A program made the translations under genes and the position numbers. DNA of 64,000 bases from Macrostomum lignano (Eukaryota). Below the pieces are notes generated by a model. That model ran no database searches. It had not been told where the DNA came from and worked only from the letters and a program-made list of their open reading frames with translations. Where the stretch lies: NCBI GenBank assembly GCA_002269645.1, contig NIVC01001615.1:62001-126000 (forward strand), given 5' to 3'. Shown in pieces: positions 1,910 to 62,480 of the stretch (position 1 is its first letter; each line of letters begins with the position of its first letter).

Positions 1910-4900
1910 ATGTCTGCGGCGCAATCTTCTTCATCCAAGCTGGAGAAATGGGCTATCGAGGACTTCAGCAAGATTGAAAAGATTGGCGAAGGTAACGGGC
2001 GCTAGGTATAGAGCGGATTTGGGGCTGGAGAGAGAGCAGATAGGGACGATATGGAAAGAGCGGATAGAGGCGATAGGGAGAGAGCGGATAGGGGCGATAG
2101 ATAGGGGGAGAGCGGATAGGCGCGCCAGGGAGAGAGCGGATAGGGGCGCCAGGGAGAGAGCGGATAGGCGCGCCAGGGAGAGAGCGGATAGGGGCGCCAG
2201 GGAGAGAGCGGATAGGGGCGCCAGGGAGAGAGCGGATAGGGGCGCTAGAGAGAGAGTGGATAGGGGCGCCAGGGAGAGAGCGGATAGGCGCGCCAGGGAG
2301 AGAGCGGATAGGGGCGCCAGGGAGAGAGCGGATAGGGGCGCCAGGGAGAGAGCGGATAGGGGCGCCAGGGAGAGAGCGGATAGGGGCGCCAGGGAGAGAG
2401 CGGATAGGGGCGCCAGGGAGAGAGCGGATAGGGGCGCCAGGGAGAGAGCGGATAGGGGCGCCAGGGAGAGAGCGGATAGGGGCGCCAGGGAGAGAGCGGA
2501 TAGGGGCGCCAGGGAGAGAGCGGATAGGGGCGCCAGGGAGAGAGCATATCATTCCAAAGAGAGGTCGACTGCTGGACTCCGATACACTGCTACTATTTGA
2601 GAACTAACCCCTGGATTTGCCCGAACCGCAGGCACCTACGGTGTAGTGTACAAGGCGCGCAACAACCGCAACCAGAAGATCATGGCTTTGAAAAAGATCC
2701 GTCTGGAATGCCAGGAAGAAGGCATGCCGTCAACAGCTGTACGCGAAGTGTCCCTGCTCAAGGAGCTGCAGCATCCCAACATTGTCTGTCTAGAGAGCGT
2801 GCTGATGCAGGAGGGCAAGCTGTATCTGGTGTTCGAGTACCTCACTATGGACCTGAAGAAGTACTTGGACAACCAGCGCGGCAGGACTCTTATTCCTGAG
2901 AAGACTCGCAGCTTCATGTATCAGTTGTTGCAGGTGCGTCCTCTGCTTTTGCCTTTCCCTATCTCTGTGCCTTCCCTTCATCTCTACCTTTCCCTCCCTT
3001 CATCTCTACCCTTTCCTCCCTTCATCTCTACCTTTTCCTCCCTTCATCTCTACATTTCTCTCCCTTCATCTCTACATTTCCCTCCCTTCATCTCTACCTT
3101 TTCCTCCCTTCATCTCTACCTTTTCCTCCCTTCATCTCTACCTTTTCCTCCCTTCATCTCTACCTTTTCCTCCCTTCATCTCTACCTTTTCCTCCCTTCA
3201 TCTTTACCTTTTTGTCCCTTCATCTCTACCTTTTCCTCCCTTCATCTCGACATTTCCCTTCATCTCTACATTTCATTCTTCTCATCTCTACCTTTTCCTC
3301 CCTTCATCTCGACGTTTCATTCTTCTCATCTCTACCTTTTCCTCCCTTTATCTCTACCTTTCTCCCTTCATTTCTAAATTTCCTTCCTTCATCTCTACCT
3401 TTCCCTCCCTTCATCTCTACCTTTTCCTCCCTTCATCTCTACCGTTTCCTCCCTTCATCTCTACCTTTTTCTCATTTCTCCCTTTCCTCCCTTCATCTCG
3501 ACCGCTCCCTCCCTTCATCTCTACCTTTTCCTCCCTTCATCTCTACCTTTTCCTCCCTTCATCTCTACCTTCTCTCTTTATTTCTATCTTTTTCCTTTTA
3601 TCTCTGTCCTTCCCTTCATCTCTTTCCTTTTCATCTCTGTCTATCCCTCTCTTCCTTTCTCTGCCTTTCCCAACCTTATATCTCCCGACAAAACGTACAA
3701 ACTTCTCACTCTGCGCGTGTTCCCAACTCCCTTGGCAACCCAGGGCCTGCTGTTCTGCCACACCCGGCGTGTTGTCCATCGCGACCTGAAGCCGCAGAAC
3801 ATTCTGCTAGACGAGCGGGGCGTCATTAAACTGGCGGATTTCGGACTGGCTCGCGCCTTTGGCGTGCCTGTTCGCGTTCTGACACACGAGGTTTGTGCTT
3901 GTGGGATCTTTTTAGCGCATTGGTCCAGGTTCTCTTGGTATCTTTGAGTCTTCTTTCTCGGACCTATTTATTGACCCACGCCCTGAATCACTGACCCATT
4001 TATTGACCCACGGCCTGAATCACTGACCCATTTATTGACCCACGCCCTGAATCACTGACCCATTTATTGACCCACGCCCTGAATCACTGACCCATTTATT
4101 GATCCACGCCCTGAATCACTGACCCATTTATTGACCCACGCCCTAAATCACTGACCCATTTCTTGATCCACGGCCTGAATCACTGACCCATTCACTGACC
4201 CACACCCTGAATCACTGACCCATTTATTGGCCCACACCCTGAATCACTGACCCATTTATTGACCCACACCCTGAATCACTGACCCATTTATTGACCCACC
4301 CTGAATCACTGACCCATTTATTGGCCCACACCCTGAATCACTGACCCATTTATTGACCCACATCCTGAATCACAGACCCATTTATTGACCCACGCTCTGA
4401 ATCACTGACCCATTTATTGACCAGCACCCTGAATCACTGACCCATTTACTGACCCACGCTCTAAATTACTGACCTATTTATTGACCTACGCTCTGAATCA
4501 CTGACCCATTTACTGACCCACGCTCTAAATCACTGACCCATTTATTGACCTACGCTCTGAATCACTGACCCAGTAACACTTTATCGCGACCGAGTTTTGC
4601 ACTCATATTCGAACTCCAGGTAGTCACTCTGTGGTACCGGGCTCCCGAGATTCTTCTGGGCAGCCCCCGCTACTCCTGCCCGGTGGACATGTGGAGCATG
4701 GGCTGCATATTCGCCGAGATCGCCATGCTCAAGCCGCTATTCCACGGCGACTCGGAGATCGATCAGCTGTTCCGCATCTTCCGCATCCTCGGCACGCCAA
4801 CTGAGGACACGTGGCCTGGCGTGACCTCCATGCCGGAGTACAAGCAGATGTTCCCAACCTGGCAGGGCCTCCGGTTGTCTAGCGCTGTTGAGAACCGGCT

Positions 4901-5665
4901 CAATGATGAAGGCATGGATCTGCTGCAGGTGCGTTTGGGGCGCGACTCCCGTGTCAGACTGTAGCACTCCCGTGTCAGACTGTAGCACTCCAGTGTCAGA
5001 CTGTAGCACTCCCGTGTCAGACTGTAGCACTCCAGTGTCAGACTGTAGCACTCCCGTGTCAGACTGTAGCACTCCAGTGTCAGACAGTAGCACTCCAGTG
5101 TCAGACAGTAGCACTCCAGTGTCAGACAGTAGCACTCCAGTGGCAGACTGTAGCACTCCCTGTGTCAGACTGTAGCACTCCAGTGTCAGACTGTAGCACT
5201 CCAGTGGCAGACTGTAGCACTCCCCGTGTCAGACTGTAGCACTCCCGTGTCAGACTGTAGCACTCCAGTGTCAGACTGTAGCACTCCCGTGTCAGACTGT
5301 AGCACTCCAGTGTCAGACTGTAGCACTCCAGTGTCAGACAGTAGCACTCCAGTGTCAGACAGTAGCACTCCAGTGTCAGACTGTAGCACTCCAGTGTCAG
5401 ACTGCATCACTCCAGTGTCAGACTGTAGCACTCCAGTGGCAGACTGTAGCACTCCAGTGGCAGACTGAACCGTCTATAACGAACATCTCCAACCCCGCAG
5501 AAGCTGCTGATCTACGAGCCATCAGACCGGTGCAACGCCCGCGAGGCGCTGGAGCACGCCTACTTCTCCGGCATGGACAAGTCCGCTATGCCGGCCCGCA
5601 CGCCCGAGAAAGTTTGGCGGCCTCAGCGCGCCCCTCTCAACGTAGTGGAGAACATGGCGGTCTAG
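1910..5665 (+). CDS. CDK1: Cyclin-dependent kinase 1 (cdc2), 5 exons
   Basis: Exons 1910-1991, 2632-2933, 3744-3890, 4620-4928, 5501-5665, all introns GT-AG with consistent phase. Spliced protein reads [37 protein letters not shown]...[17 protein letters not shown]...HRDLKPQN...[28 protein letters not shown]...[13 protein letters not shown]. The PSTAIRE-like helix, GEGTYG loop and GDSEIDQ motif are typical of CDK1/2. Confidence 0.93.
2030..2545. repeat. Minisatellite, 24-bp unit GGGGCGCCAGGGAGAGAGCGGATA (CDK1 intron 1)
   Basis: About 20 near-identical tandem copies. Confidence 0.95.
2970..3570. repeat. Minisatellite, 22-bp unit CCTTTTCCTCCCTTCATCTCTA (CDK1 intron 2)
   Basis: Pyrimidine-rich tandem copies filling most of the intron. 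Confidence 0.93.
3960..4570. repeat. Minisatellite, 32-bp unit GACCCATTTATTGACCCACGCCCTGAATCACT (CDK1 intron 3)
   Basis: Tandem copies visible. Confidence 0.95.
4945..5468. repeat. Minisatellite, 21-bp unit CCAGTGTCAGACTGTAGCACT (CDK1 intron 4)
   Basis: Tandem copies visible. Confidence 0.95.
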
Positions 5666-6239
5666 ATGGGGGCCGTTTCAATTTAATAGTGTCAACAGTG
5701 CTTAGGCGCAATGGATATTGCCAGTTAATTCTTTGCATACGTATTAATCCAATTAAATTAATACCTTCCTACCTGCTAATCCAAAATATGCCTAAATAAT
5801 AAGTTTATTTTCTCTTCAACAACTTTTTACAAACTTCTCTCTCTCTCTGTGTGTCTGGATAGTGCATTTTTGGCACCGGTAATAAAGTTTAGCAGTTGCC
5901 CTACTATCAGTAGCTAATGAAGTCTATTGCATTTTGTTTGCTATTTACCAATATATTTTTGTGCGCGTATTATTAGTTGGTTAAGTATTTTTTATTTCCT
6001 TTTTTAACATGCAGCGGCTGCAATTGGGTCAAGTTTATTTTAACGTCACCAACCCGTCTTACTGTTCCGTTAATTAGTTTAATATTTGCTGCTCAAATCT
6101 TTTCGGTCATTATTGATTTCTCGCTTTGCGCTAATTTTCCTCGTTTTACTTCAGGATTGAATTCGAAAAGTAGCTCTGTTAATTAAATTTTGACTGGGTT
6201 GGAATTTCATTTCTTCTGAAAATTGAGGAGCTGCATCTA

Positions 6240-6975
6240 GTCTAGACAGCAATAGTTAGATCTGAGCATTTTGTGTTAAATCTAGACAGAAACTGGTTAG
6301 ATCTAGGCATGTTCAGAGTAGATCTAGACATGAAATGGTCAGATCTAGGCATGTTCAGGTCAGATCTAGACATGAAATGGTCAGATCTAGACATGAAATG
6401 GTCAGATCTAGACATGTTCAGGTCAGATCTAGACATGAAATGGTCAGATCTAGGCATGTTCAGGTCAGATCTAGACATGAAATGGTCAGATCTAGACATG
6501 TTTATAGTAGATCTTAACATAAAATGATCAGATCTAGGCATGTGTGGGTTAGATCTAGACATGAAATGGTCAGATCTAGGCAAGTTCGGGTTCGATCTAG
6601 ACATAAAAATGGTCAGATCTAGGCATGTTTATAGTAGATCTTAACATAAAATGATCAGATCTAGGCATGTTCGGGTTCGATCTAGACATGAAATGGTCAG
6701 ATCTAGGCATGTTCGGATTAGATCTAGACATGAAATGGTCAGATCTAGGCATGTTCGGGTTAGATCTAGACATGAAATGGTCAGATCTAGGCATGTTCGG
6801 GTTAGATCTAGACATGAAATGGTCAGATCTAGGCATGTTTATAGTAGATCTTAACATAAAATGATCAGATCTAGGCATGTTCGGGTTAGATCTAGACATG
6901 AAATGGTCAGATCTAGGCAAGTTCGGGTTCGATCTAGGCATGAAATGGTCAAATCTAGGCATGTTCGGGTTAGAT
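6240..6975. repeat. Minisatellite, 21-bp units (AGATCTAGACATGAAATGGTC and variants, often alternating as a 42-bp dimer) between CDK1 and MPPE1
   Basis: Tandem copies built on overlapping AGATCT/TCTAGA palindromes. Confidence 0.93.
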
Positions 6976-7147
6976 ATGGACAGAAAAGGGTCAAAATTTC
7001 AGTAATAAATTAACAGTCGAGGACCACAACGAGAAGCAAGTTAAATATTTTTAAAGTACATTCTCCAGTTACAGCAGCGCCTCAGCTCCCTGCACTGCAT
7101 CCGCAATCGGCCGGTTTTGCTGTTGCTGACTGAGGCGTTGGGTCCAG

Positions 7148-9727
7148 CCATCCGACCCCAGCATCCCCGTCACTGACAGAGACCGAGGGTCAGACCGAGC
7201 CGCACACACCGCCCCTAAATCAGGGACGGTGCCCGATTCCTGCGCTGCTGTGGCCGCCGACGCCGTCTCGTCAACGTCGACCACGTCGTCGACGTCGACA
7301 ATTGCGTCGCCGTCGCGGCCGCCGCGCCGTTGTCGGCGGCGCTTCCTGACGCTGCTGGCGCTGCTAGGCGGCTTGGTTGCGTTCTGCGAATACCTGATCT
7401 ACTATGCCGTCCTGCTCGCCTGCACCTGGCCGGCGCTGCCGGGCGAGTCGCCGCTGGCGCCAACCAGCCGGTCGGATGGCGTCCGGGTGATGCTGCTGGC
7501 CGACACTCACCTGCTGGGCTGGCGGCAGGGCCACTGGTTCGATAAGCTGCGCAGGGAGTGGCAGATGGAGCGCGCATTCCAGACGAGCCTGTTTCTGCAC
7601 CGGCCCCAGGTGAGGGCTGGCGGGTTGCTGCTTCTAGAGGGTGCTGCTTTGGGATTTGGGATATTGGAGCTTTTTGGGGATTTCGGATATTGGAGTTTTT
7701 TTGGCGGATTTGGGATATTGGAGTTTTTTGGGGATTTGGTATATTGGAGCTTTTTGGGGATTTCGGATATTGGAGTTTTTTTGGCGGATTTGGGATATTG
7801 GAGTTTTTTGGGGATTTGGTATATTGGAGCTTTTTGGGGATTTGGGATATTGGAGTTTTTTGGGGACTTGGGATATTGGAGCTTTTTGGAAATTTGGGCT
7901 ATCTGTGTGCTTTTTGGGATTTAAGTACTGGTGCTTTTTATGGATTTGGGATATTGGTGCTTCTGGGGGATTTTGGATTTTTCAGCTTCGTTCGAATTTG
8001 GGATATTGGAGCTTTGTTGGGATATTCGGCACTTTATAGTACTTAAAATTTTCATGTACCAACATCGATTTATGTAATAATTCAAGCAATGGCCCCTCCT
8101 GGCAGGTTGTTATTATCCTCGGCGACCTGTTCGACGAAGGCAAATGGGCCGACGACTTCGAGTTCCGGCACCACTTGGCCCGCTTCCGCCGGATATTCCG
8201 CGTCCCGGACGGCACCCGCCTGCTAGTGGTGGCCGGCAACCACGACATCGGCTTTCACTACGATGTCACGCAGCACAAGGTGGACCGCTTCGAGGCCGCC
8301 TTCCACCTGCCCGCTGTGCAGCTGGTGTCGGTAGGCTGACTTGGATACTCAGCCGGAACCTCGCCTTTTGATTATCACTTACCTCGCCCCAGCCCAATCC
8401 CGAATTGCAAGAATCGCCCTAATCTCGAATTCCAAGCATCGCCCCAATTCTGTGAATTGCAAGAATCGCCCAAATCCCGAAATTCCAACAATCGCCCTAC
8501 TCTCGAATTCCAATAATCGCCCTAATTATAAATTCCAAGAATCGCCCCAATTCTGTGAATTCCAAGAATCGCCCTAATTCTGAATTCAAAGCATCGTCCC
8601 GATCCCGAATTCCAAGAATCGCCCCAATTCTGTGAATTGCAAGAATCGCCCTAATTATAAATTCCAAGAATCGCCCCAATTCTGTGAATTGCAAGAATCG
8701 CCCTAATTATAAATTCCAAGAATCGCCCTAATTATAAATTCCAAGAATCGCCCCGATTCTGTGCATTCCAAGAATCGCCCCGATTCTGTGCATTCCAAGA
8801 ATCGCCCCAATTCTGTGAATTGCAAGAATCGCCCCAATTATGAATTCCAAGAATCGCCCCAATTCTGTGAATTGCAAGAATCGCCCTAATTATGAATTCC
8901 AAGAATCGCCCCAATTCTGTGAATTCCAACAATCGCGCCGACCCCGCTACCCGCAGATTGGCGGCGTGAATTTCGTGCTGGCCAATAGCGTCGCATTCGA
9001 AGGCGACGGCTGCTTCCTCTGCCGACGCGCCCGAGTCGAGCTGGCCGCCGTGGCCAACCGGCTGCGCTGCGCATTCGGCATCCGCCTCGGCGACGCCTGC
9101 AGCGAGGAAGCCCTCGGAGGCGGCGGTCAGCTGCCCCCGGCCACCGCCCCGATCCTGCTGACGCACTACCCGCTGGCCAGGCTCGATGAGAGCGCCTGCG
9201 ACACCGTCGCTTCGCCTGCCGAAGGAGCCGCCGCCGCCCCAGGCGACAGTCGCGACAACGTCGAGATCATCGACGGCGAAGACTCGGCACCGGCTGCTGC
9301 TCGCCAGACGCGGCTCCGGCCTCGCTGGGACTGCCTGTCCGCAGAGGCGTCGGACACACTGGCCGAGGCTGTCCGACCGCGACTGGCCTTTGTCGGACAC
9401 ACGCACTGGTCCTGCCGGCGCCGCCTCAGCCTGGCCGGCGGCTCGCGCAATCTCACCGAGTACACTTTGCCCAGCTTCTCCTGGCGCAACATCAACTCGC
9501 CCAGCTTCCTACTGCTCACCGTGTCCGGTGGCGCCCACTCCGTTGCCAAGTGCCGGATGCCGCGCGAGTCCACGGTGATCGGCCTGTACACCTACGGCGT
9601 GCCCGCCGTGCTGCTGTGGTTCCTGTGGCCCTGCCTGCTCAGTCTGGCCGCTTCTGTGTGCTGGCACTGCGCCAGTTTCTTCACAGCGCAGGCGCCCTGG
9701 CGTCAGGCGGACGATAAGCACCTGTGA
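7148..9727 (+). CDS. MPPE1: Metallophosphoesterase 1 / PGAP5 (GPI remodelling), 3 exons; 5' end uncertain
   Basis: Exons ~7148-7609, 8106-8330, 8957-9727. N-terminal anchor FLTLLALLGGLVAFCEYLIYY..CTWP, motifs ADTH, GDLFDEG, GNHDIGF, THYPL, GHTH, and a C-terminal hydrophobic segment. No in-frame ATG precedes the anchor, so the start coordinate is a candidate in-frame acceptor. Confidence 0.9.
7645..8030. repeat. Minisatellite, ~25-26-bp unit GGGATTTGGGATATTGGAGTTTTTT (MPPE1 intron 1)
   Basis: Degenerate tandem copies. Confidence 0.9.
8395..8935. repeat. Minisatellite, 25/27-bp units CCAAGAATCGCCCCAATTCTGTGAATT (MPPE1 intron 2)
   Basis: Tandem copies visible. Confidence 0.92.
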
Positions 9728-9864: not shown

Positions 9865-10330
9865 TAGGAATCCCAGATACCAAAGCTGAGAATCCCAGAT
9901 CCCCAAGTCTGAGAATCCCAGATCCCAAAGCTGAGAATCCCAGATCCTAGCGCTGAGAATCCCAGATCCCCAAGTCTGAGAATCCCAGATCCCCAAGTCT
10001 GAGAATCCCAGATCCCAAAGCTGAGAATCCCAGATCCCAAAGCTGAGAATCCCAGATCCTAGCGCTGAGAATCCCAGATCCTAGCGCTGAGAATCCCAGA
10101 TCCCCAAGTCTGAGAATCCCGGATCCCAAAGCTGAGAATCCCAGATCCTAACGCTGAGAATCCCAGATCCCCAAAGCTGAGAATCCCAGATCCCAAATCT
10201 GAGAATCCCGAATCCCAAATCCGAGAACCTCATATCCCAAATCTGAGAACCCCAGATCCCAAATCTAGGAATCCCAGATCCCAGACCTAAAAATAAGTAT
10301 CTTAGATCCCAGATCTAAATTCCAATCCCA
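9865..10330. repeat. Minisatellite, 22-23-bp unit GCTGAGAATCCCAGATCCCAAA downstream of MPPE1
   Basis: Tandem copies visible. Confidence 0.92.
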
Positions 10331-10934
10331 AAGCCTATGCTATGCTAAACATTTTGCTAGAAAATAAACAATGATCGCAGGCACTCAGAAAAAAATTAAA
10401 AAACACTATTTTGAGCAACATTTATCGAGTCCTCTTGTCCCTCTGACCCGCGTCTTTCTACTGACGGAGTTCTGCTGAGAAAAGAAAAAAATTAAACAAG
10501 TTTCTCCGCAGTTTAGCCGCGTAATGCTACTATGAGTAGGTTTTATTAATTGAAAGTATATAGCTTGTGTGTACTTCATTGATTGCACATCGATTTTGTG
10601 TATTCGTGCCTTTGCGCTAAATGGCTATTGGGGTGGATAATTTGTTATATCTATTTAGAAGCAGAATTGCATGATTGCTATATTTGTTTCCTGCAAATTA
10701 CTGCTTTTTAATAAATCCTTGTTAATCCGCTCTTAGTGCGAAGCAGCAGCTGTGAAAAACTATACTGCTATAATATTAAATATAACTGCTTAGAACTGTT
10801 GAATTTCTTGCCTGATTAACTGATTACCTTGTGTCTCGTTTTAAGTGTATTAAATCTGAATGAGTTTTTATATCTAAGTTTTTTTTCAAAGATATTAATT
10901 TTTTCAAGTCAACATCAATTATCTGTCTGAGTAT

Positions 10935-11350
10935 CCTCAAGGCTCGATTGGAAATCTCATGAGAATTCCCAAAGCTCGATCGGAAATCTCATGAGAATCC
11001 TCAAAGCTCGATTGGAAATCTCATGAGAATCCTCAAGGCTCGATCGAAAATCTCATGAGAATCCTTAAAGCTCGATCGAAAATCTCATGAGAATCCTTAA
11101 GGCCCGATCGGAAATCTCATGAGAATCCTCAAAAATCCATTGGAAATCTCATGAGAATCCTCAAGACTCGATCGGAAATCTCATGAGAATCCTCAAGGCT
11201 CTATTGGAAATCTCATAAGAATCCTTTAAAGCTTTATTGAAAATCTCATGAGAAGCTTCATAGCTCTATCGGAAATATGAGAATCCTTAAAGCTTCAATG
11301 GAAATCTCATGATAATCCTCAAAGCTGGATTGGAAATCTCATGAGAATCC
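10935..11350. repeat. Minisatellite, 32-bp unit GAAATCTCATGAGAATCCTCAAAGCTCGATCG
   Basis: About 13 diverging tandem copies. Confidence 0.92.
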
Positions 11351-12269: not shown

Positions 12270-12600
12270 CTCCGGGAACTCGAACTCGTCAGTGAACTCA
12301 GCAGGGAACTCGTCATATAACTCATCAGGAAGCTAGTCAGATAACTTGTCAAAGAACTCGTCAGGGAACTTGTCAGGGAACTCGTCAGGGAACTCGTCAG
12401 AGAACTTGTCAGAGAACTTGTCAGGGAAATCGTCAGGGAACTCGTCAGAGAACTTGTCGGAGAACTTGTCAGGGAAATCGTCAGGGAACTTGTCAGGGAA
12501 CTCGTCAGAGAACTCGTCGGGGAACTCGTCCGGGAACTTGTCAGGGAACTCGTCAGAGAACTCGTCAGAGAACTTGTCAGGGAACTCGTCAGAGAACTCT
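12270..12600. repeat. Minisatellite, 12-bp unit TCAGGGAACTCG immediately 3' of the GPCR stop codon
   Basis: Tandem copies visible. Confidence 0.92.
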
Positions 12601-12615
12601 TTTATCGAGGACTTG

Positions 12616-52300: not shown

Positions 52301-54722
52301 AGGTCTTTTACGTGTCAGCGAAAACTGGTGAGCATTTGTGAGGATACAGATTTGTAGCCAGCTGCATACTTGTGATGCTGAGATTGATCCCAGTGAGATT
52401 CATGATGCTGAGATTGATCCCAGTGAGATTCATGATGCTGAGATTGATCCCAGTGAGATTCATGATGCTGAGATTGACCCCAGTGAAATTTATGATGCTG
52501 AGATTGACCCCAGTGAGATTCATGATGCTGAGATTGATCCCAGTGAGATTTATGATGCTGAGATTGATCCCAGTGAGATTCATGATGCTGAGATTGATCC
52601 CAGTGAGATTTATGATGCTGAGATTGATCCCAGTGAGATTCATGATGCTGAGATTGACCCCAGTGAAATTTATGATGCTGAGATTGACCCCAGTGAGATT
52701 CATGATGCTGAGATTGATCCCAGTGAGATTTATGATGCTGAGATTGATCCCAGTGAGATTCATGATGCTGAGATTGACCCCAGTGAAATTTATGATGCTG
52801 AGATTGACCCCAGTGAGATTCATGATGCTGAGATTGATCCCAGTGAGATTTATGATGCTGAGATTGATCCCAGTGAGATTCATGATGCTGAGATTGACCC
52901 CAGTGAAATTTATGATGCTGAGATTGACCCCAGTGAGATTCATGATGCTGAGATTGATCCCAGTGAGATTTATGATGCTGAGATTGATCCCAGTGAGATT
53001 CATGATGCTGAGATTGACCCCAGTGAAATTTATGATGCTGAGATTGACCCCAGTGAGATTCATGATGCTGAGATTGATCCCAGTGAGATTTATGATGCTG
53101 AGATTGATCCCAGTGAGATTCATGATGCTGAGATTGACCCCAGTGAAATTTATGATGCTGAGATTGACCCCAGTGAGATTCATGATGCTGAGATTGATCC
53201 CAGTGAGATTTATGATGCTGAGATTGATCCCAGTGAGATTTGTGATGCTGAGATTGATCCCAGTGAGATTTGTGATGCTGAGATTGATCCCAGTGAGATT
53301 TATGATGCTGAGATTGACCCCAGTGAGATTCATGATGCTCAGATTGATCCCAGTGAGATTCATGATGCTGAGATTGACCCCAGTGAGATTCATGATGCTG
53401 AGATTGATCCCAGTGAGATTCATGATGCTGAGATTGATCCCAGTGAGATTTGTGATGCTGAGATTGATCCCAGTGAGATTTGTGATGCTGAGATTGATCA
53501 CAGTGAGATTTATGATGCTAAGATTTATGACAGTGAGATTGATCACAATGAGATTGATCACAATGAGATTGATCACAAAAAGATTGATCACAGTGAGATT
53601 GATCCCAATGAGATTGATCACAATGAGATTGATCACAATGAGATTGATCACAATGAGATTGATCACAATGAGATTGATCACAATGAGATTGATCACAATG
53701 AGATTGATCACAATGAGATTGATCACAATCATTTGATCACAATGAGATTGATCACTATGATTTGATCACAATGAGATTGATCACAATCATTTGATCACAA
53801 TGAGATTGATCACTATGAGATTGATAACAATGAGATTGATCACAATGAGATTGATCACAATGAGATTGATCACAATGAGATTGATCACAATCATTTGATC
53901 ACAATGAGATTGATCACTATGAGATTGATCACAATGAGATTGATCACAATGAGATTGATCACAATCATTTGATCACAATGAGATTCATCACTATGATTTG
54001 ATCACAATGAGATTGATCACTATGAGATTGATCACTATGATTTGATCACAATGAGATTGATCACAATCATTTGATCACAATGAGATTGATCACAATCATT
54101 TGATCACAATGAGATTGATCACAATGAGATTGATCACTATGATTTGATCACAATGAGATTGATCACAATCATTTGATCACAATGAGATTGATCACAATGA
54201 GATTGATCACAATGAGATTGATCACAATGAGATTGATCACAATGAGATTGATCACAATGAGATTGATCACAATGAGATTGATCACAATGAGATTGATCAC
54301 AATGAGATTGATCACAATCATTTGATCACAATGAGATTGATCACTATGATTTGATCACAATGAGATTGATCACAATCATTTGATCACAATGAGATTGATC
54401 ACTATGATTTGATCACTATGAGATTGATCACTATGAGATTGATCACAATCATTCCCACTTGTCTGCAGGTGATGGAGTTCAGCAGCTGCTGACGGACACG
54501 GGGCGGCTGTTGATGGGCGCCCACCTGCTCGGCCGAAAAGCGTCGACACGCACGACAGCAGCAGGCGGCCCAGCCTCCGGTCGACCAGCTTCATCTGGCG
54601 GCGCCCTCAGGCTGGACGCAGCGGGAGGGCGTCGCGGCTCGGCCGGTGCCGGTGCCGGGCAGCTGCGGCAGGACGGGGCAGAGGGGGAGGCCGGAGAGAA
54701 GCGGTGCTGCAGACTCCTCTGA
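49321..54722 (+). CDS. Atypical Rab-family small GTPase, 4 exons
   Basis: Exons 49321-49482, 50729-50891, 52208-52327, 54469-54722 with consistent phases. G1 GESGVGKT, G3 WDTAGVE, RFRTLTRNYYR, G4 NKND, G5 SAK, and C-terminal CCRLL prenylation motif. Confidence 0.9.
49489..49629. repeat. (GACT)n microsatellite (Rab intron 1)
   Basis: Near-perfect tetranucleotide run starting just after the donor site. Confidence 0.95.
50375..50715. repeat. Minisatellite, 25-bp unit CTACTCACCCAATCTACCAGACTGT (Rab intron 1, 3' end)
   Basis: Tandem copies up to the acceptor. Confidence 0.92.
51080..52110. repeat. Minisatellite, 10-bp unit GACCCCACC(T/C/A) (Rab intron 2)
   Basis: About 100 copies, often as T/C/A trimers. 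Confidence 0.95.
52365..54450. repeat. Compound satellite: 30-bp unit GATGCTGAGATTGATCCCAGTGAGATTCAT grading into 15-bp GAGATTGATCACAAT (Rab intron 3)
   Basis: About 2 kb of tandem copies with a 120-bp higher-order period in 52621-53220. Confidence 0.96.
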
Positions 54723-61769: not shown

Positions 61770-62480
61770 AATTCCTATGGGAAGAAAATCCCCCAATAGT
61801 ATCGGACAGAAATCCGTTGGGAAGAAAATCCCCAATAATATCGGACTGAAATCCATTAGGAAGAAAATCCCCAATAGTATCTAACTGAAACCCCTTGGGA
61901 AGAAAATCCTCATTAGTATCGGACTGAAATCCGTTTGGGAAGAAAATCCCCAACAGTATCGAACTGAAATCCGTTTGGGAAGAAAATCCCCCAATAATAT
62001 CGAACTGAAATCCGTTTGGGAAGAAAATCCCCAACAGTATCGAACTGAAATCCGTTTGGGAAGAAAATCCCCAACAGTATCGAACTGAAATCCGTTTGGG
62101 AAGAAAATCCCCAACAGTATCGAACTGAAATCCGTTTGGGAAGAAAATCCCCCAATAATATCGGACTGAAATCCCTTGGGAAGAAAATCCCCATTAGTAT
62201 CGGACTGAAATCCATTGGGAAGAAAATCCCCCAATAATATCGGACTGAAATCCATTTGGGAAGAAAATCCCCCAATAATATCGGACTGAAATCCATTTGG
62301 GAAGAAAATCCCCCAATAATATCGAACTGAAATCCATTGGGAAGAAAATCCCCAGTAATGTCGAACTGAAATCCATTGGGAAGAAAATCCCCAGTAATGT
62401 CGAACTGAAATCCATTGGGAAGAAATCCCCAATAATATCGAACTGAAATCCATTGGGAAGAAAATCCCACTAGTATCGGA
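61770..62480. repeat. Minisatellite, ~40-bp unit TATCGAACTGAAATCCGTTTGGGAAGAAAATCCCCAACAG downstream of DDAH
   Basis: Tandem copies visible. Confidence 0.94.

What the first reader, a model, noticed from the sequence alone, without database searches (positions are those of the whole stretch)
7127..7492. MPPE1 lacks an AUG before its conserved membrane anchor, possibly supplied by a spliced leader
Seen: there is no ATG in any frame from 6979 to 7403. The frame is closed by TGA at 7127-7129. The first in-frame ATG (7490) lies after the conserved anchor FLTLLALLGGLVAFCEYLIYY and behind two out-of-frame ATGs (7404, 7476). An AG at 7146-7147, about 20 nt after a branch-like GCTGAC, places CCA TCC GAC exactly in frame. 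Established: flatworm spliced leaders end in AUG, and this AUG can act as initiator when spliced in frame. Inference: SL-AUG plus 7148 gives M-PSDPSIPV..., so translation would depend on trans-splicing. Alternatives are CUG (7130) or GUG (7229) initiation, or an unseen upstream exon.
Basis: partly seen in the sequence, partly recalled or inferred. Interest (0 to 1): 0.72.

Follow-up and report, generated by a model that had tools for sequence, protein, structure and literature searches.

The report
Start codon missing from flatworm MPPE1
In the flatworm Macrostomum lignano, the gene for the GPI-anchor-processing enzyme MPPE1/PGAP5 has no start codon of its own ahead of its conserved membrane anchor; it most likely borrows the AUG at the end of the trans-spliced leader, a known flatworm mechanism, but probably at a splice site about 80 bases upstream of the one first proposed.

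Summary
The window is Macrostomum lignano, Mlig_3_7 contig NIVC01001615.1, positions 62001-126000. There is no ATG from 6979 to 7403. A TGA at 7127 closes the frame. The first in-frame ATG (7490) is an internal, conserved Met downstream of the conserved signal anchor (7343-7405). GenBank annotates all three genomic copies from that internal Met, which gives anchorless 371-aa proteins.

The M. lignano spliced leader (SL) ends in ATG, and SL-AUG initiation is established in flatworms. The kind of explanation is therefore reasonable and not new.

The proposed acceptor (7146/7147) is weak. In the diverged second copy (homeolog, dN/dS 0.15, so functional) a 2-bp deletion puts that AG out of frame, and CAG has become AAG.

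A better fit has three parts:
- SL addition at the tandem, in-phase acceptors CTCCAG|TTACAG|CAG| (exon starts 7069, 7075, 7078).
- A 73-nt exon 1a whose codon usage looks coding in the SL-AUG frame.

This model is in frame in both homeologs.

No RNA evidence could be reached, and the microintron donor is poor. Interest is modest.

The parts
1910..5665 (+). Upstream same-strand CDK1/2-like kinase gene (5 coding exons, stop TAG 5663-5665). AATAAA lies at 5881-5886. It may be the upstream partner in an operon.
   Evidence: tblastn of P0122; called genes with Pkinase; sequence.
6241..6993 (.). Tandem repeat array with a 42-nt (2 x 21) period. It fills most of the intergenic or outron region and carries about 30 ATGs, the last at 6976.
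   Evidence: Tandem Repeats Finder; sequence.
7063..7077 (+). Three tandem acceptors, CTCCAG|TTACAG|CAG|. The exon would start at 7069, 7075 or 7078, and all three are in the same phase. This is the proposed site of SL addition. The first two match the published trans-splice acceptor motif [T/C]TNCAG exactly.
   Evidence: Motif from PMC8629364; motif scan; conserved in the homeolog; exon start used by public models P0126 and P0253.
7069..7141 (+). Proposed coding exon 1a (24 codons + 1 nt: LQQRLSSLHCIRNRPVLLLLTEAL), read in the frame set by the SL's ATG.
   Evidence: Codon score +12 bits; 0.3% of shuffles reach it in this frame and 1% in any frame. GC at codon positions 1/2/3 is 0.58/0.38/0.83, against 0.65/0.44/0.82 in known exons. 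1.4% divergence from the homeolog, against 8.1% just upstream; the only indel is 6 nt.
7127..7129 (+). TGA that closes the anchor's reading frame in unspliced DNA.
7142..7223 (+). Proposed 5' microintron: GTCCAG...AAATCAG, 82 nt. Alternative in-phase ends are 7181 (40 nt) and 7193 (52 nt); the pair 7137/7179 is also in phase.
   Evidence: Enumeration of in-frame solutions. 5.0% substitutions plus a 2-nt indel, about the synonymous rate of 4.65%. 7184-7225 is not coding-like in frame (-1.02 per codon), whereas 7226-7339 is (+0.23). Public models P0125, P0002 and P0126 begin exons at these acceptors.
7146..7147 (+). It is in frame in this copy only.
7224..7609 (+). Exon 1b. It encodes a Ser/Thr/Arg-rich cytosolic tail, the RRCRRR positive patch, the signal anchor (7343-7405) and the first metal-binding motif (LADTH). 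The donor is CAG|GTGAGG at 7609|7610.
   Evidence: Translation; alignment with homologues; 0.9-1.5% divergence.
7490..7492 (+). ATG used as the start in the GenBank annotation of all three copies (371-aa products). It is an internal conserved Met, 28 codons after the anchor ends.
   Evidence: P0001 and P0121; alignment.
8106..8330 (+). MPPE1 exon 2 (GDLFDEG and GNHD motifs).
   Evidence: Pfam PF00149.
8957..9727 (+). MPPE1 exon 3, with the C-terminal hydrophobic segment and stop TGA 9725-9727.
   Evidence: 99-100% identity to P0001 and P0121.

Best explanation
The locus is one of three copies of the M. lignano MPPE1/PGAP5 gene. MPPE1 is an ER/Golgi metallophosphoesterase whose catalytic domain must be carried into the lumen by an N-terminal signal anchor.

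No copy encodes an AUG upstream of that anchor. The most likely mechanism is that the initiator is the AUG at the 3' end of the 35-nt spliced leader.

In the proposed model the SL is joined to the tandem acceptors at 7068|7069 (or alternatively 7074|7075 or 7077|7078, all in phase). The SL AUG then opens a 73-nt coding exon 1a (7069-7141). A 5' microintron is removed. It starts at 7142 and most likely ends at 7223 in this copy; in the homeolog it ends at the CAG equivalent to 7179. That joins exon 1a in frame to the tail, the anchor and the rest of the enzyme (485-499 aa).

If the microintron is retained, the SL-AUG frame ends after 36 codons at TGA 7174-7176 and no enzyme is made. The gene probably lies downstream of the CDK gene in an SL-resolved operon.

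Shown: absence of an AUG, conservation of and selection on the anchor, the frame arithmetic in both homeologs, and the coding-like composition of exon 1a.

Inferred: that the SL is added here, that the microintron is spliced, and that translation starts at the SL AUG.
For: 1. Species and gene: 99-100% identity to M. lignano BOX15_Mlig000731g1 and Mlig030469g1/g2. The window is identical to NIVC01001615.1.
2. The SL ends in ATG, and about 30% of genes are trans-spliced (PMC8629364). SL AUG as initiator is established and has been noted for Macrostomum.
3. There is no genomic AUG before the anchor in any copy. The anchor is conserved across phyla. dN/dS between homeologs is 0.15.
4. 7063-7068 and 7069-7074 are, with 6997-7002 (where SL addition would read ATG then TAA), the only exact [T/C]TNCAG matches between the repeat array and the anchor. 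All three tandem AGs are in phase.
5. Exon 1a is coding-like in exactly the SL-AUG frame, with shuffle P about 0.003-0.01.
6. The model is in frame in both homeologs. The 2-bp indel falls in the proposed intron and the 6-bp indel in the proposed exon.
7. Divergence steps from 8.1% upstream to 1.4% in exon 1a, 5.0% in the intron and 0.9% in exon 1b.
8. Each homeolog has a CAG acceptor in phase with donor 7142. This copy, where the extra AG puts the first CAG out of phase, has AG 7222-7223, which the other copy lacks.
9. Public gene models place exon boundaries at the same sites.
10. Microintrons occur in flatworms, including M. lignano, and cluster at 5' ends of genes (PMC6530080).
Against: - No transcript, SL-read or ribosome evidence could be obtained.
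- The microintron donor (TGG|GTCCAG; GTCAAG in the homeolog) departs from the GT[G/A]AG consensus, whereas flatworm microintrons are reported to have near-consensus sites.
- If any GT..AG pair is allowed, 95 in-frame solutions exist in this copy and 46 in the homeolog. Frame arithmetic alone therefore proves little.
- The public models that share the boundaries are probably gene-finder output, not RNA evidence. In P0253 the donor moves when assembly errors change the frame, and both long models borrow their ATG from the CDK gene.
- In this copy the first CAG after the donor (7177-7179) is out of phase.
- The indels lie in simple repeats ((TTGCTG)n and (AG)n), where such lengths arise anyway.
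- The substitution counts are small.
- The 2-bp deletion rests on one assembly contig.
Confidence: 0.42

Rival explanations
1. One reading: the SL is trans-spliced at 7147|7148 and its AUG starts M-PSDPSIPVTDRDRGSDR... with no further splicing.
For: - It is the only intron-free in-frame solution in this copy.
- A branch-like CTGAC lies 17-18 nt upstream, and the acceptor TCCAG matches 5 of 6 motif positions.
- The third copy, L003, is identical here.
Against: - In the homeolog the same AG is out of frame because of the 2-bp deletion. The SL-AUG frame there would end after a short (about 22-codon) ORF, and the acceptor is weakened to CAAG.
- That copy is nevertheless under purifying selection.
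- The stretch 7148-7225 evolves at about the neutral rate. Its 7184-7225 part is not coding-like in this frame, and 7142-7180 scores about zero.
Confidence: 0.1
2. Non-AUG initiation on the genomic sequence. Examples are ACG 7226 (G at -3 and G at +4), GTG 7229 or an in-frame CTG, whether or not the mRNA carries an SL.
For: - Constraint and coding-like codon usage begin at about 7226, right at ACG-GTG.
- Both codons are conserved in the homeolog.
- Everything upstream would then be 5' UTR, so the 2-bp indel would be harmless.
Against: - Near-cognate starts are usually inefficient (general knowledge), which suits a housekeeping enzyme poorly.
- It does not explain the coding-like frame and the conservation of 7069-7141.
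- If an SL were added at any AG from 7180 to 7222, its AUG would be out of frame and would open a roughly 40-55-codon ORF ending at TGA 7347-7349, which would compete with such a start (sequence).
Confidence: 0.15
3. An upstream cis-spliced exon supplies the AUG. It could be an undetected first exon in 5666-7068 or further upstream, or read-through from the CDK gene as in the fused public models.
For: - Acceptors are widely shared between cis- and trans-splicing in flatworms (PMC12582326).
- UniProt models P0126 and P0253 join ...NVVENMA to LQQR... at 7068|7069.
- The repeat array upstream holds about 30 copies of AAATG|GTCAG, each an ATG followed by GT.
Against: - The CDK gene has its own stop and an AATAAA 216 nt downstream, and the donor needed (GCG|GTCTAG) is poor.
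- The fused models behave like gene-finder artefacts forced to find an ATG.
- GenBank annotates the two genes separately in all three copies.
- The region 5666-7068 is AT-rich or satellite sequence and diverges by about 8%.
Confidence: 0.15
4. The annotated ATG 7490 is the true start, and the protein has no anchor.
For: - It is the first in-frame ATG and is used in the GenBank annotation of all three copies.
Against: - The Met is an internal conserved residue.
- The anchor upstream is conserved across phyla and shows only conservative V-to-A changes and synonymous changes between homeologs.
- Two out-of-frame ATGs precede it.
- An anchorless enzyme could not reach the ER lumen (established PGAP5 biology; my own knowledge).
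Confidence: 0.03

Closest known systems
Flatworm SL 3'-terminal AUG used as initiator methionine (Cheng, Cohen, Ndegwa and Davis 2006, J Biol Chem, Schistosoma mansoni; 'slORFs' in PMC9851317)
   Same: The SL ends in AUG. The recipient ORF has no AUG of its own for its essential N-terminus. The SL AUG would be in frame, so translation would depend on trans-splicing.
   Different: This is a different species (a free-living macrostomid) and a different gene. Here the frame appears to depend in addition on removal of a 5' microintron. Nothing has been shown experimentally for this locus.
SL-resolved operons of M. lignano (Wudarski et al. 2017, PMC5730564; Ustyantsev and Berezikov 2021, PMC8629364)
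   Same: There is a same-strand upstream gene. The intergenic distance is about 1.16 kb from the poly(A) signal and about 0.4 kb after subtracting the tandem repeat, below the 1-kb repeat-adjusted threshold. The acceptors match [T/C]TNCAG.
   Different: Trans-splicing of this gene and a common precursor were not verified. The two genes carry different transcriptional-unit names in the annotation.
MPPE1/PGAP5 of animals
   Same: 43-49% identity over the full length. The N-terminal anchor motif (FCEFLIYY..C.WP), the metallophosphoesterase motifs and a C-terminal hydrophobic segment are all present.
   Different: The cytosolic tail is about 65-80 residues, against 2-43 in the homologues aligned. 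There is no genome-encoded initiator.
Flatworm microintrons (PMC6530080)
   Same: [quoted passage not shown]
   Different: The donor is far from consensus, and no junction evidence exists.

Membership tests
MPPE1/PGAP5 metallophosphoesterase | Calcineurin-like phosphoesterase domain with D-x-H, GD-x-x-DEG and GNHD motifs | tested here: met
   Pfam PF00149, E 3.2e-9. LADTH, GDLFDEG and GNHD are present in the translation. 43-49% identity to named MPPE1/PGAP5 proteins.
MPPE1/PGAP5 metallophosphoesterase | Conserved N-terminal signal anchor ahead of the catalytic domain | tested here: met
   Alignment A4: E, Y, V, C, W and P are invariant in the anchor across 7 sequences.
MPPE1/PGAP5 metallophosphoesterase | Removal of the side-chain ethanolamine phosphate from GPI anchors | not testable with these tools
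   This is a biochemical property and would need an assay.
SL-AUG-initiated flatworm mRNA | The species' spliced leader ends in AUG | tested here: met
   The SL CGGTCTCTTACTGCGAAGACTCAATTTATTGCATG is given in PMC8629364. PMC10468722 notes the final ATG as a start codon.
SL-AUG-initiated flatworm mRNA | The mRNA carries the SL at a mapped acceptor | not testable with these tools
   No RNA reads or transcripts of this gene could be reached.
SL-AUG-initiated flatworm mRNA | The SL AUG is in frame with the ORF, with no intervening stop | tested here: inconclusive
   Met at 7068|7069 plus a microintron in both homeologs. Met at 7147|7148 in this copy only, and failed in the homeolog. Many GT..AG combinations would also satisfy the condition.
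SL-AUG-initiated flatworm mRNA | No genome-encoded AUG can give the complete protein | tested here: met
   No ATG lies between the in-frame stop and the anchor in the window, L003 or L001.
SL-AUG-initiated flatworm mRNA | Translation actually starts at the SL AUG | not testable with these tools
   This needs ribosome profiling, proteomics or a reporter.
SL-resolved operon (downstream gene) | Same-strand upstream gene at a repeat-adjusted distance below 1 kb | tested here: met
   CDK stop at 5665, AATAAA at 5881-5886, acceptor at 7068, and 753 nt of tandem repeat between them. The criterion comes from PMC8629364.
SL-resolved operon (downstream gene) | A polycistronic precursor and SL on the downstream gene | not testable with these tools
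   The only hints are fused public models, and these look like gene-finder artefacts.
Flatworm microintron | [quoted passage not shown] | tested here: met
   Candidates of 40, 52 and 82 nt in this copy and 38 nt in the homeolog.
Flatworm microintron | Splice sites close to consensus | tested here: not met
   The donor is GTCCAG or GTCAAG, against GT[G/A]AG. The acceptors at 7223 and at the position equivalent to 7179 are CAG.

The most novel reading that the evidence does not exclude
Production of an essential ER enzyme is gated by two RNA-processing events that are not visible in the gene's own coding sequence. Trans-splicing supplies the only AUG. Removal of a 5' microintron sets the frame, and retention of it gives a 36-codon dead-end ORF. 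This arrangement has been kept in both homeologs through compensating changes of the acceptor (a 2-bp indel together with gain or loss of AG 7222-7223). It would be a splicing-controlled on/off switch for translation.
Probability: 0.22. Interest if true: 0.55.

Novelty: new member of a known kind. Interest (0 to 1): 0.35.

Why it matters
If correct, three points follow.

1. Annotation. All three GenBank copies of M. lignano MPPE1 (PAA68219.1, PAA61056.1, PAA65803.1) are annotated from an internal Met and lack the signal anchor. The UniProt models either lack a start or borrow one from the neighbouring CDK gene. This is a concrete example of a general fault: transcripts with the SL trimmed off lose their start codon.

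2. Biology. It would be a gene whose expression depends wholly on trans-splicing, in a flatworm that can be made transgenic. The long-standing question of how often the conserved SL AUG is really used could then be tested directly with a reporter.

3. Expectations. The mechanism itself has been known since 2006, so this is an instance of it and not a discovery of kind.

Tried and rejected
- Protein search with the N-terminal ORF alone found nothing.
- A profile of both homeolog N-termini plus the unspliced ORF, and an exhaustive HMMER search of 1.84 billion representatives, found only M. lignano's own models (P0002, P0253) covering the extension. No transcript-derived proteins and no relatives with a comparable tail turned up.
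- Exact look-ups of four hypothetical full-length products (SL-AUG at 7069, SL-AUG at 7148, the homeolog version, and the version without Met) were all absent.
- Supplements of Wudarski 2017, Grudniewska 2018 and Grudniewska 2016 were searched for the gene ids and for MPPE1/PGAP5, with no hits.
- Wasik et al. 2015 (PMC4603488) is not held, so the basis of the ML2 gene models could not be read.
- The SL RNA gene is not in the window.
- RNA folding of 7040-7240 is not significant, z = -1.09.
- Pfam scans of ten other long ORFs gave only repeat-driven hits.
- No tRNAs were found.
- Rejected idea: that the fused CDK-MPPE1 models are RNA evidence. P0253 changes its donor to keep the frame across assembly errors.
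- Rejected idea: that the ATG-free run is significant in itself.
- The closest non-lignano relative (P0003, from run ERR9850614, 49% identity) has its own ATG two residues before the anchor and no SL on the contig. This shows that a genomic start is the usual state.
Full report
**Identity of the locus**

The spliced ORF (exon 1 up to 7609, exon 2 at 8106-8330, exon 3 at 8957-9727) is 99-100% identical to Macrostomum lignano proteins BOX15_Mlig000731g1 and BOX15_Mlig030469g1/g2. It is 43-49% identical over its full length to named MPPE1/PGAP5 proteins of many animals, and it hits Pfam Metallophos.

The first 19.7 kb of the window, which is all that the fetched locus L004 overlaps, is base-for-base identical to GenBank contig NIVC01001615.1 of assembly Mlig_3_7 (window position 1 = contig position 62001). 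Two further copies exist:
- NIVC01002076.1 (L003) is identical to the window across 6990-7350.
- NIVC01001410.1 (L001) is a diverged second copy (homeolog), 96% identical here.

**Check of the observation**

- There is no ATG from 6979 to 7403.
- The in-frame stop TGA is at 7127.
- ATGs 7404 and 7476 are out of frame.
- The first in-frame ATG is at 7490.
- AG 7146-7147 is followed by an in-frame CCA TCC GAC.

The anchor (7343-7405) aligns with the N-terminal anchor of MPPE1 from insects, an annelid, a leech, a nemertean and a frog, with invariant E, Y, V, C, W and P. All of those proteins start 2-43 residues upstream of the hydrophobic segment. The Met at 7490 aligns with an internal residue just before the D-x-H metal site.

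GenBank nevertheless annotates all three copies from that Met, as 371-aa proteins.

The ATG-free run has P about 0.005-0.013 for its composition. The window contains a dozen longer runs, so the run alone is not remarkable. The anomaly is its position.

**Both homeologs are functional**

From codon 7226 to the stop, the window copy and L001 differ at 17 synonymous and 7 non-synonymous sites. This gives pS 4.65%, pN 0.69% and a ratio of 0.15. Within the anchor the only changes are two V-to-A substitutions and some synonymous ones. Whatever supplies the start codon must therefore work in both copies.

L001 differs from the window upstream of the anchor in three relevant ways:
- a 2-bp deletion at 7178-7179;
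- a C-to-A change that turns the acceptor CCAG into CAAG;
- a 6-bp insertion further upstream.

In L001 no AG between the in-frame stop and the anchor is in frame. SL addition at the equivalent of 7147|7148 would give only a short dead-end ORF (about 22 codons). In the window copy, 7146/7147 is the only intron-free in-frame solution. I could not check that.

**What is known about the spliced leader**

- M. lignano has one 35-nt SL, CGGTCTCTTACTGCGAAGACTCAATTTATTGCATG. About 30% of genes are trans-spliced and about 15% lie in operons. The enriched trans-splice acceptor motif is [T/C]TNCAG (PMC8629364).
- Wiberg et al. [quoted passage not shown]
- Use of the flatworm SL AUG as initiator was shown by Cheng et al. 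2006, as cited in PMC9851317 and PMC12582326.

The kind of mechanism is thus established, and a new case is a new member of a known kind.

**A better-fitting model**

Between the repeat array and the anchor, the exact motif occurs on the + strand only at three places:
- 6997-7002, where SL addition would read ATG followed by TAA;
- 7063-7068 (CTCCAG);
- 7069-7074 (TTACAG).

A third AG follows at 7076-7077. Exon starts at 7069, 7075 and 7078 are all in one phase.

Read from the SL's ATG, 7069-7141 encodes LQQRLSSLHCIRNRPVLLLLTEAL. In that frame the GC content at codon positions 1/2/3 is 0.58/0.38/0.83, against 0.65/0.44/0.82 in known exons of this locus. The codon score is +12 bits, against -13 and -18 in the other two frames. 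Only 0.3% of shuffles reach that score in the same frame, and 1% in any frame.

That frame ends at TGA 7174-7176 unless an intron starting at 7142 (TGG|GTCCAG) is removed. With that donor, the AGs ending at 7181, 7187, 7193, 7199 and 7223 are all in phase with the anchor.

Three observations favour 7223 (AAATCAG|GG) in this copy:
- All six verified introns of the two genes end in CAG.
- 7184-7225 is strongly non-coding-like in frame (synonymous-codon score -1.02 per codon), whereas 7226-7339 is coding-like (+0.23).
- 7142-7223 differs from L001 by 5.0% plus the 2-bp indel, which is about the synonymous rate. By comparison, 7226-7339 differs by 0.9%, exon 1a by 1.4% (plus an in-frame 6-bp indel), and the 75 nt upstream of 7069 by 8.1%.

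In L001 the AG at 7222-7223 is absent (TCTGGG). There, the first CAG (CTGACAG|AC) is in phase thanks to the 2-bp deletion. In the window copy the same CAG is out of phase. Each homeolog therefore has one good in-phase CAG acceptor.

The product would be 485 aa (acceptor 7223) to 499 aa (acceptor 7181).

**Weight of the public gene models**

The relevant UniProt/WormBase ParaSite models from the older ML2 assembly are these:
- P0126 (833 aa) and P0253 (530 aa) start an exon exactly at the equivalent of 7069 and splice into ...RGSDR.
- P0002 starts at the first full codon after CTGACAG|AC.
- P0125, which is of the window type, starts at the first full codon after AAATCAG|GG.

This agrees with the boundaries above. 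I do not count it as RNA evidence, for three reasons:
- P0126 and P0253 take their ATG from the last exon of the neighbouring CDK gene through a poor donor (GCG|GTCTAG).
- P0253 uses a different microintron donor where assembly errors change the frame.
- I could not read how the models were made.

They look like the output of a trained gene finder that, finding no ATG, had to look elsewhere. That is independent computational support for the acceptors and for the coding potential of exon 1a, and no more.

**Weaknesses of the model**

- The donor GTCCAG (GTCAAG in L001) is far from GT[G/A]AG, although 35% of M. lignano donors lack that motif and one verified CDK donor appears to be GTTTGT. Flatworm microintrons are reported to have near-consensus sites and to cluster at 5' ends; M. 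lignano is included in that analysis (PMC6530080).
- If any GT..AG pair is allowed, 95 in-frame solutions exist.
- The indels lie in simple repeats, and the substitution counts are small.
- Above all, no transcript evidence could be reached. Protein searches, an exhaustive HMMER search, exact look-ups and three papers' supplements found nothing.

**Genomic context**

A CDK1/2-like gene lies upstream on the same strand (1910-5665), with an AATAAA at 5881-5886. A 753-nt tandem repeat (6241-6993) fills most of the interval. The repeat-adjusted distance to 7069 is about 0.4 kb. That is below the 1-kb criterion for operons in PMC8629364, so MPPE1 may be a downstream operon gene. This is inference only.

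**Verdict**

An SL-supplied AUG is the best explanation, with about 0.55-0.6 probability summed over all acceptors.
- The specific acceptor proposed is probably wrong. The favoured version is SL addition at 7068/7074/7077 plus a 5' microintron (0.42).
- The mechanism is known, and the case is mainly of annotation and model-system interest.

Noticed in passing
window 7490-9727; L001 and L003 10001 onward: GenBank proteins PAA68219.1, PAA61056.1 and PAA65803.1 (371 aa) for all three MPPE1 copies start at an internal conserved Met and lack the signal anchor. This is probably a consequence of calling ORFs on transcripts from which the SL had been trimmed.
   Followed up: yes
window 5650-7141 (UniProt A0A1I8IG76 = P0126; P0253): Gene models from the ML2 assembly fuse the C-terminus of the CDK gene (...NVVENMA) to MPPE1 (LQQR...) through a 1.4-kb 'intron' with a poor donor. 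This looks like a gene-finder artefact caused by the missing ATG. Because of these fusions, the 90%-identity protein cluster mixes kinases and phosphoesterases.
   Followed up: partly
window 6241-6993: The 42-nt tandem repeat just upstream carries about 30 copies of AAATG|GTCAG. Each is an ATG directly followed by GT, a loose mimic of the SL's 3' end plus donor (TGCATG|GTAAG). If spliced to 7069, each would be in frame. This is probably coincidence.
   Followed up: no
window 5000-5467, 7651-8021, 8393-8936, 9868-10283, about 10930-11350, about 12290-12610: Several of the introns and intergenic spacers of the CDK and MPPE1 genes are filled with their own 21-26-nt-period tandem repeat arrays, while the exons are GC-rich (about 65%, GC3 about 0.82).
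   Followed up: partly
window 7269-7315: The cytosolic tail of MPPE1 contains an imperfect 18-nt coding repeat (ACG TCG ACC ACG TCG TCG...) that encodes a Ser/Thr-rich tract. The tail is much longer (about 65-80 aa) than in other animals (2-43 aa).
   Followed up: partly
window 52308-53732 (- strand): A 474-aa ORF gives a very strong Pfam Pentapeptide-repeat hit (E 2.6e-47, 14 stretches). It could be a real pentapeptide-repeat protein or the translation of a DNA tandem repeat.
   Followed up: no
L002 (Logan contig ERR9850614_69539) 1-120: The closest non-lignano relative found (49% identity, organism unknown) has its own ATG two codons before the hydrophobic anchor. Its contig begins with a Nextera adapter remnant and carries no SL.
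   Followed up: partly
one search compared: The word-indexed protein search returned nothing for the N-terminal query, and did not list P0002 in either N-terminal search, although the exhaustive search later found P0002 at E 1e-30. Negative results from the indexed search on short, low-complexity queries should not be trusted.
   Followed up: yes
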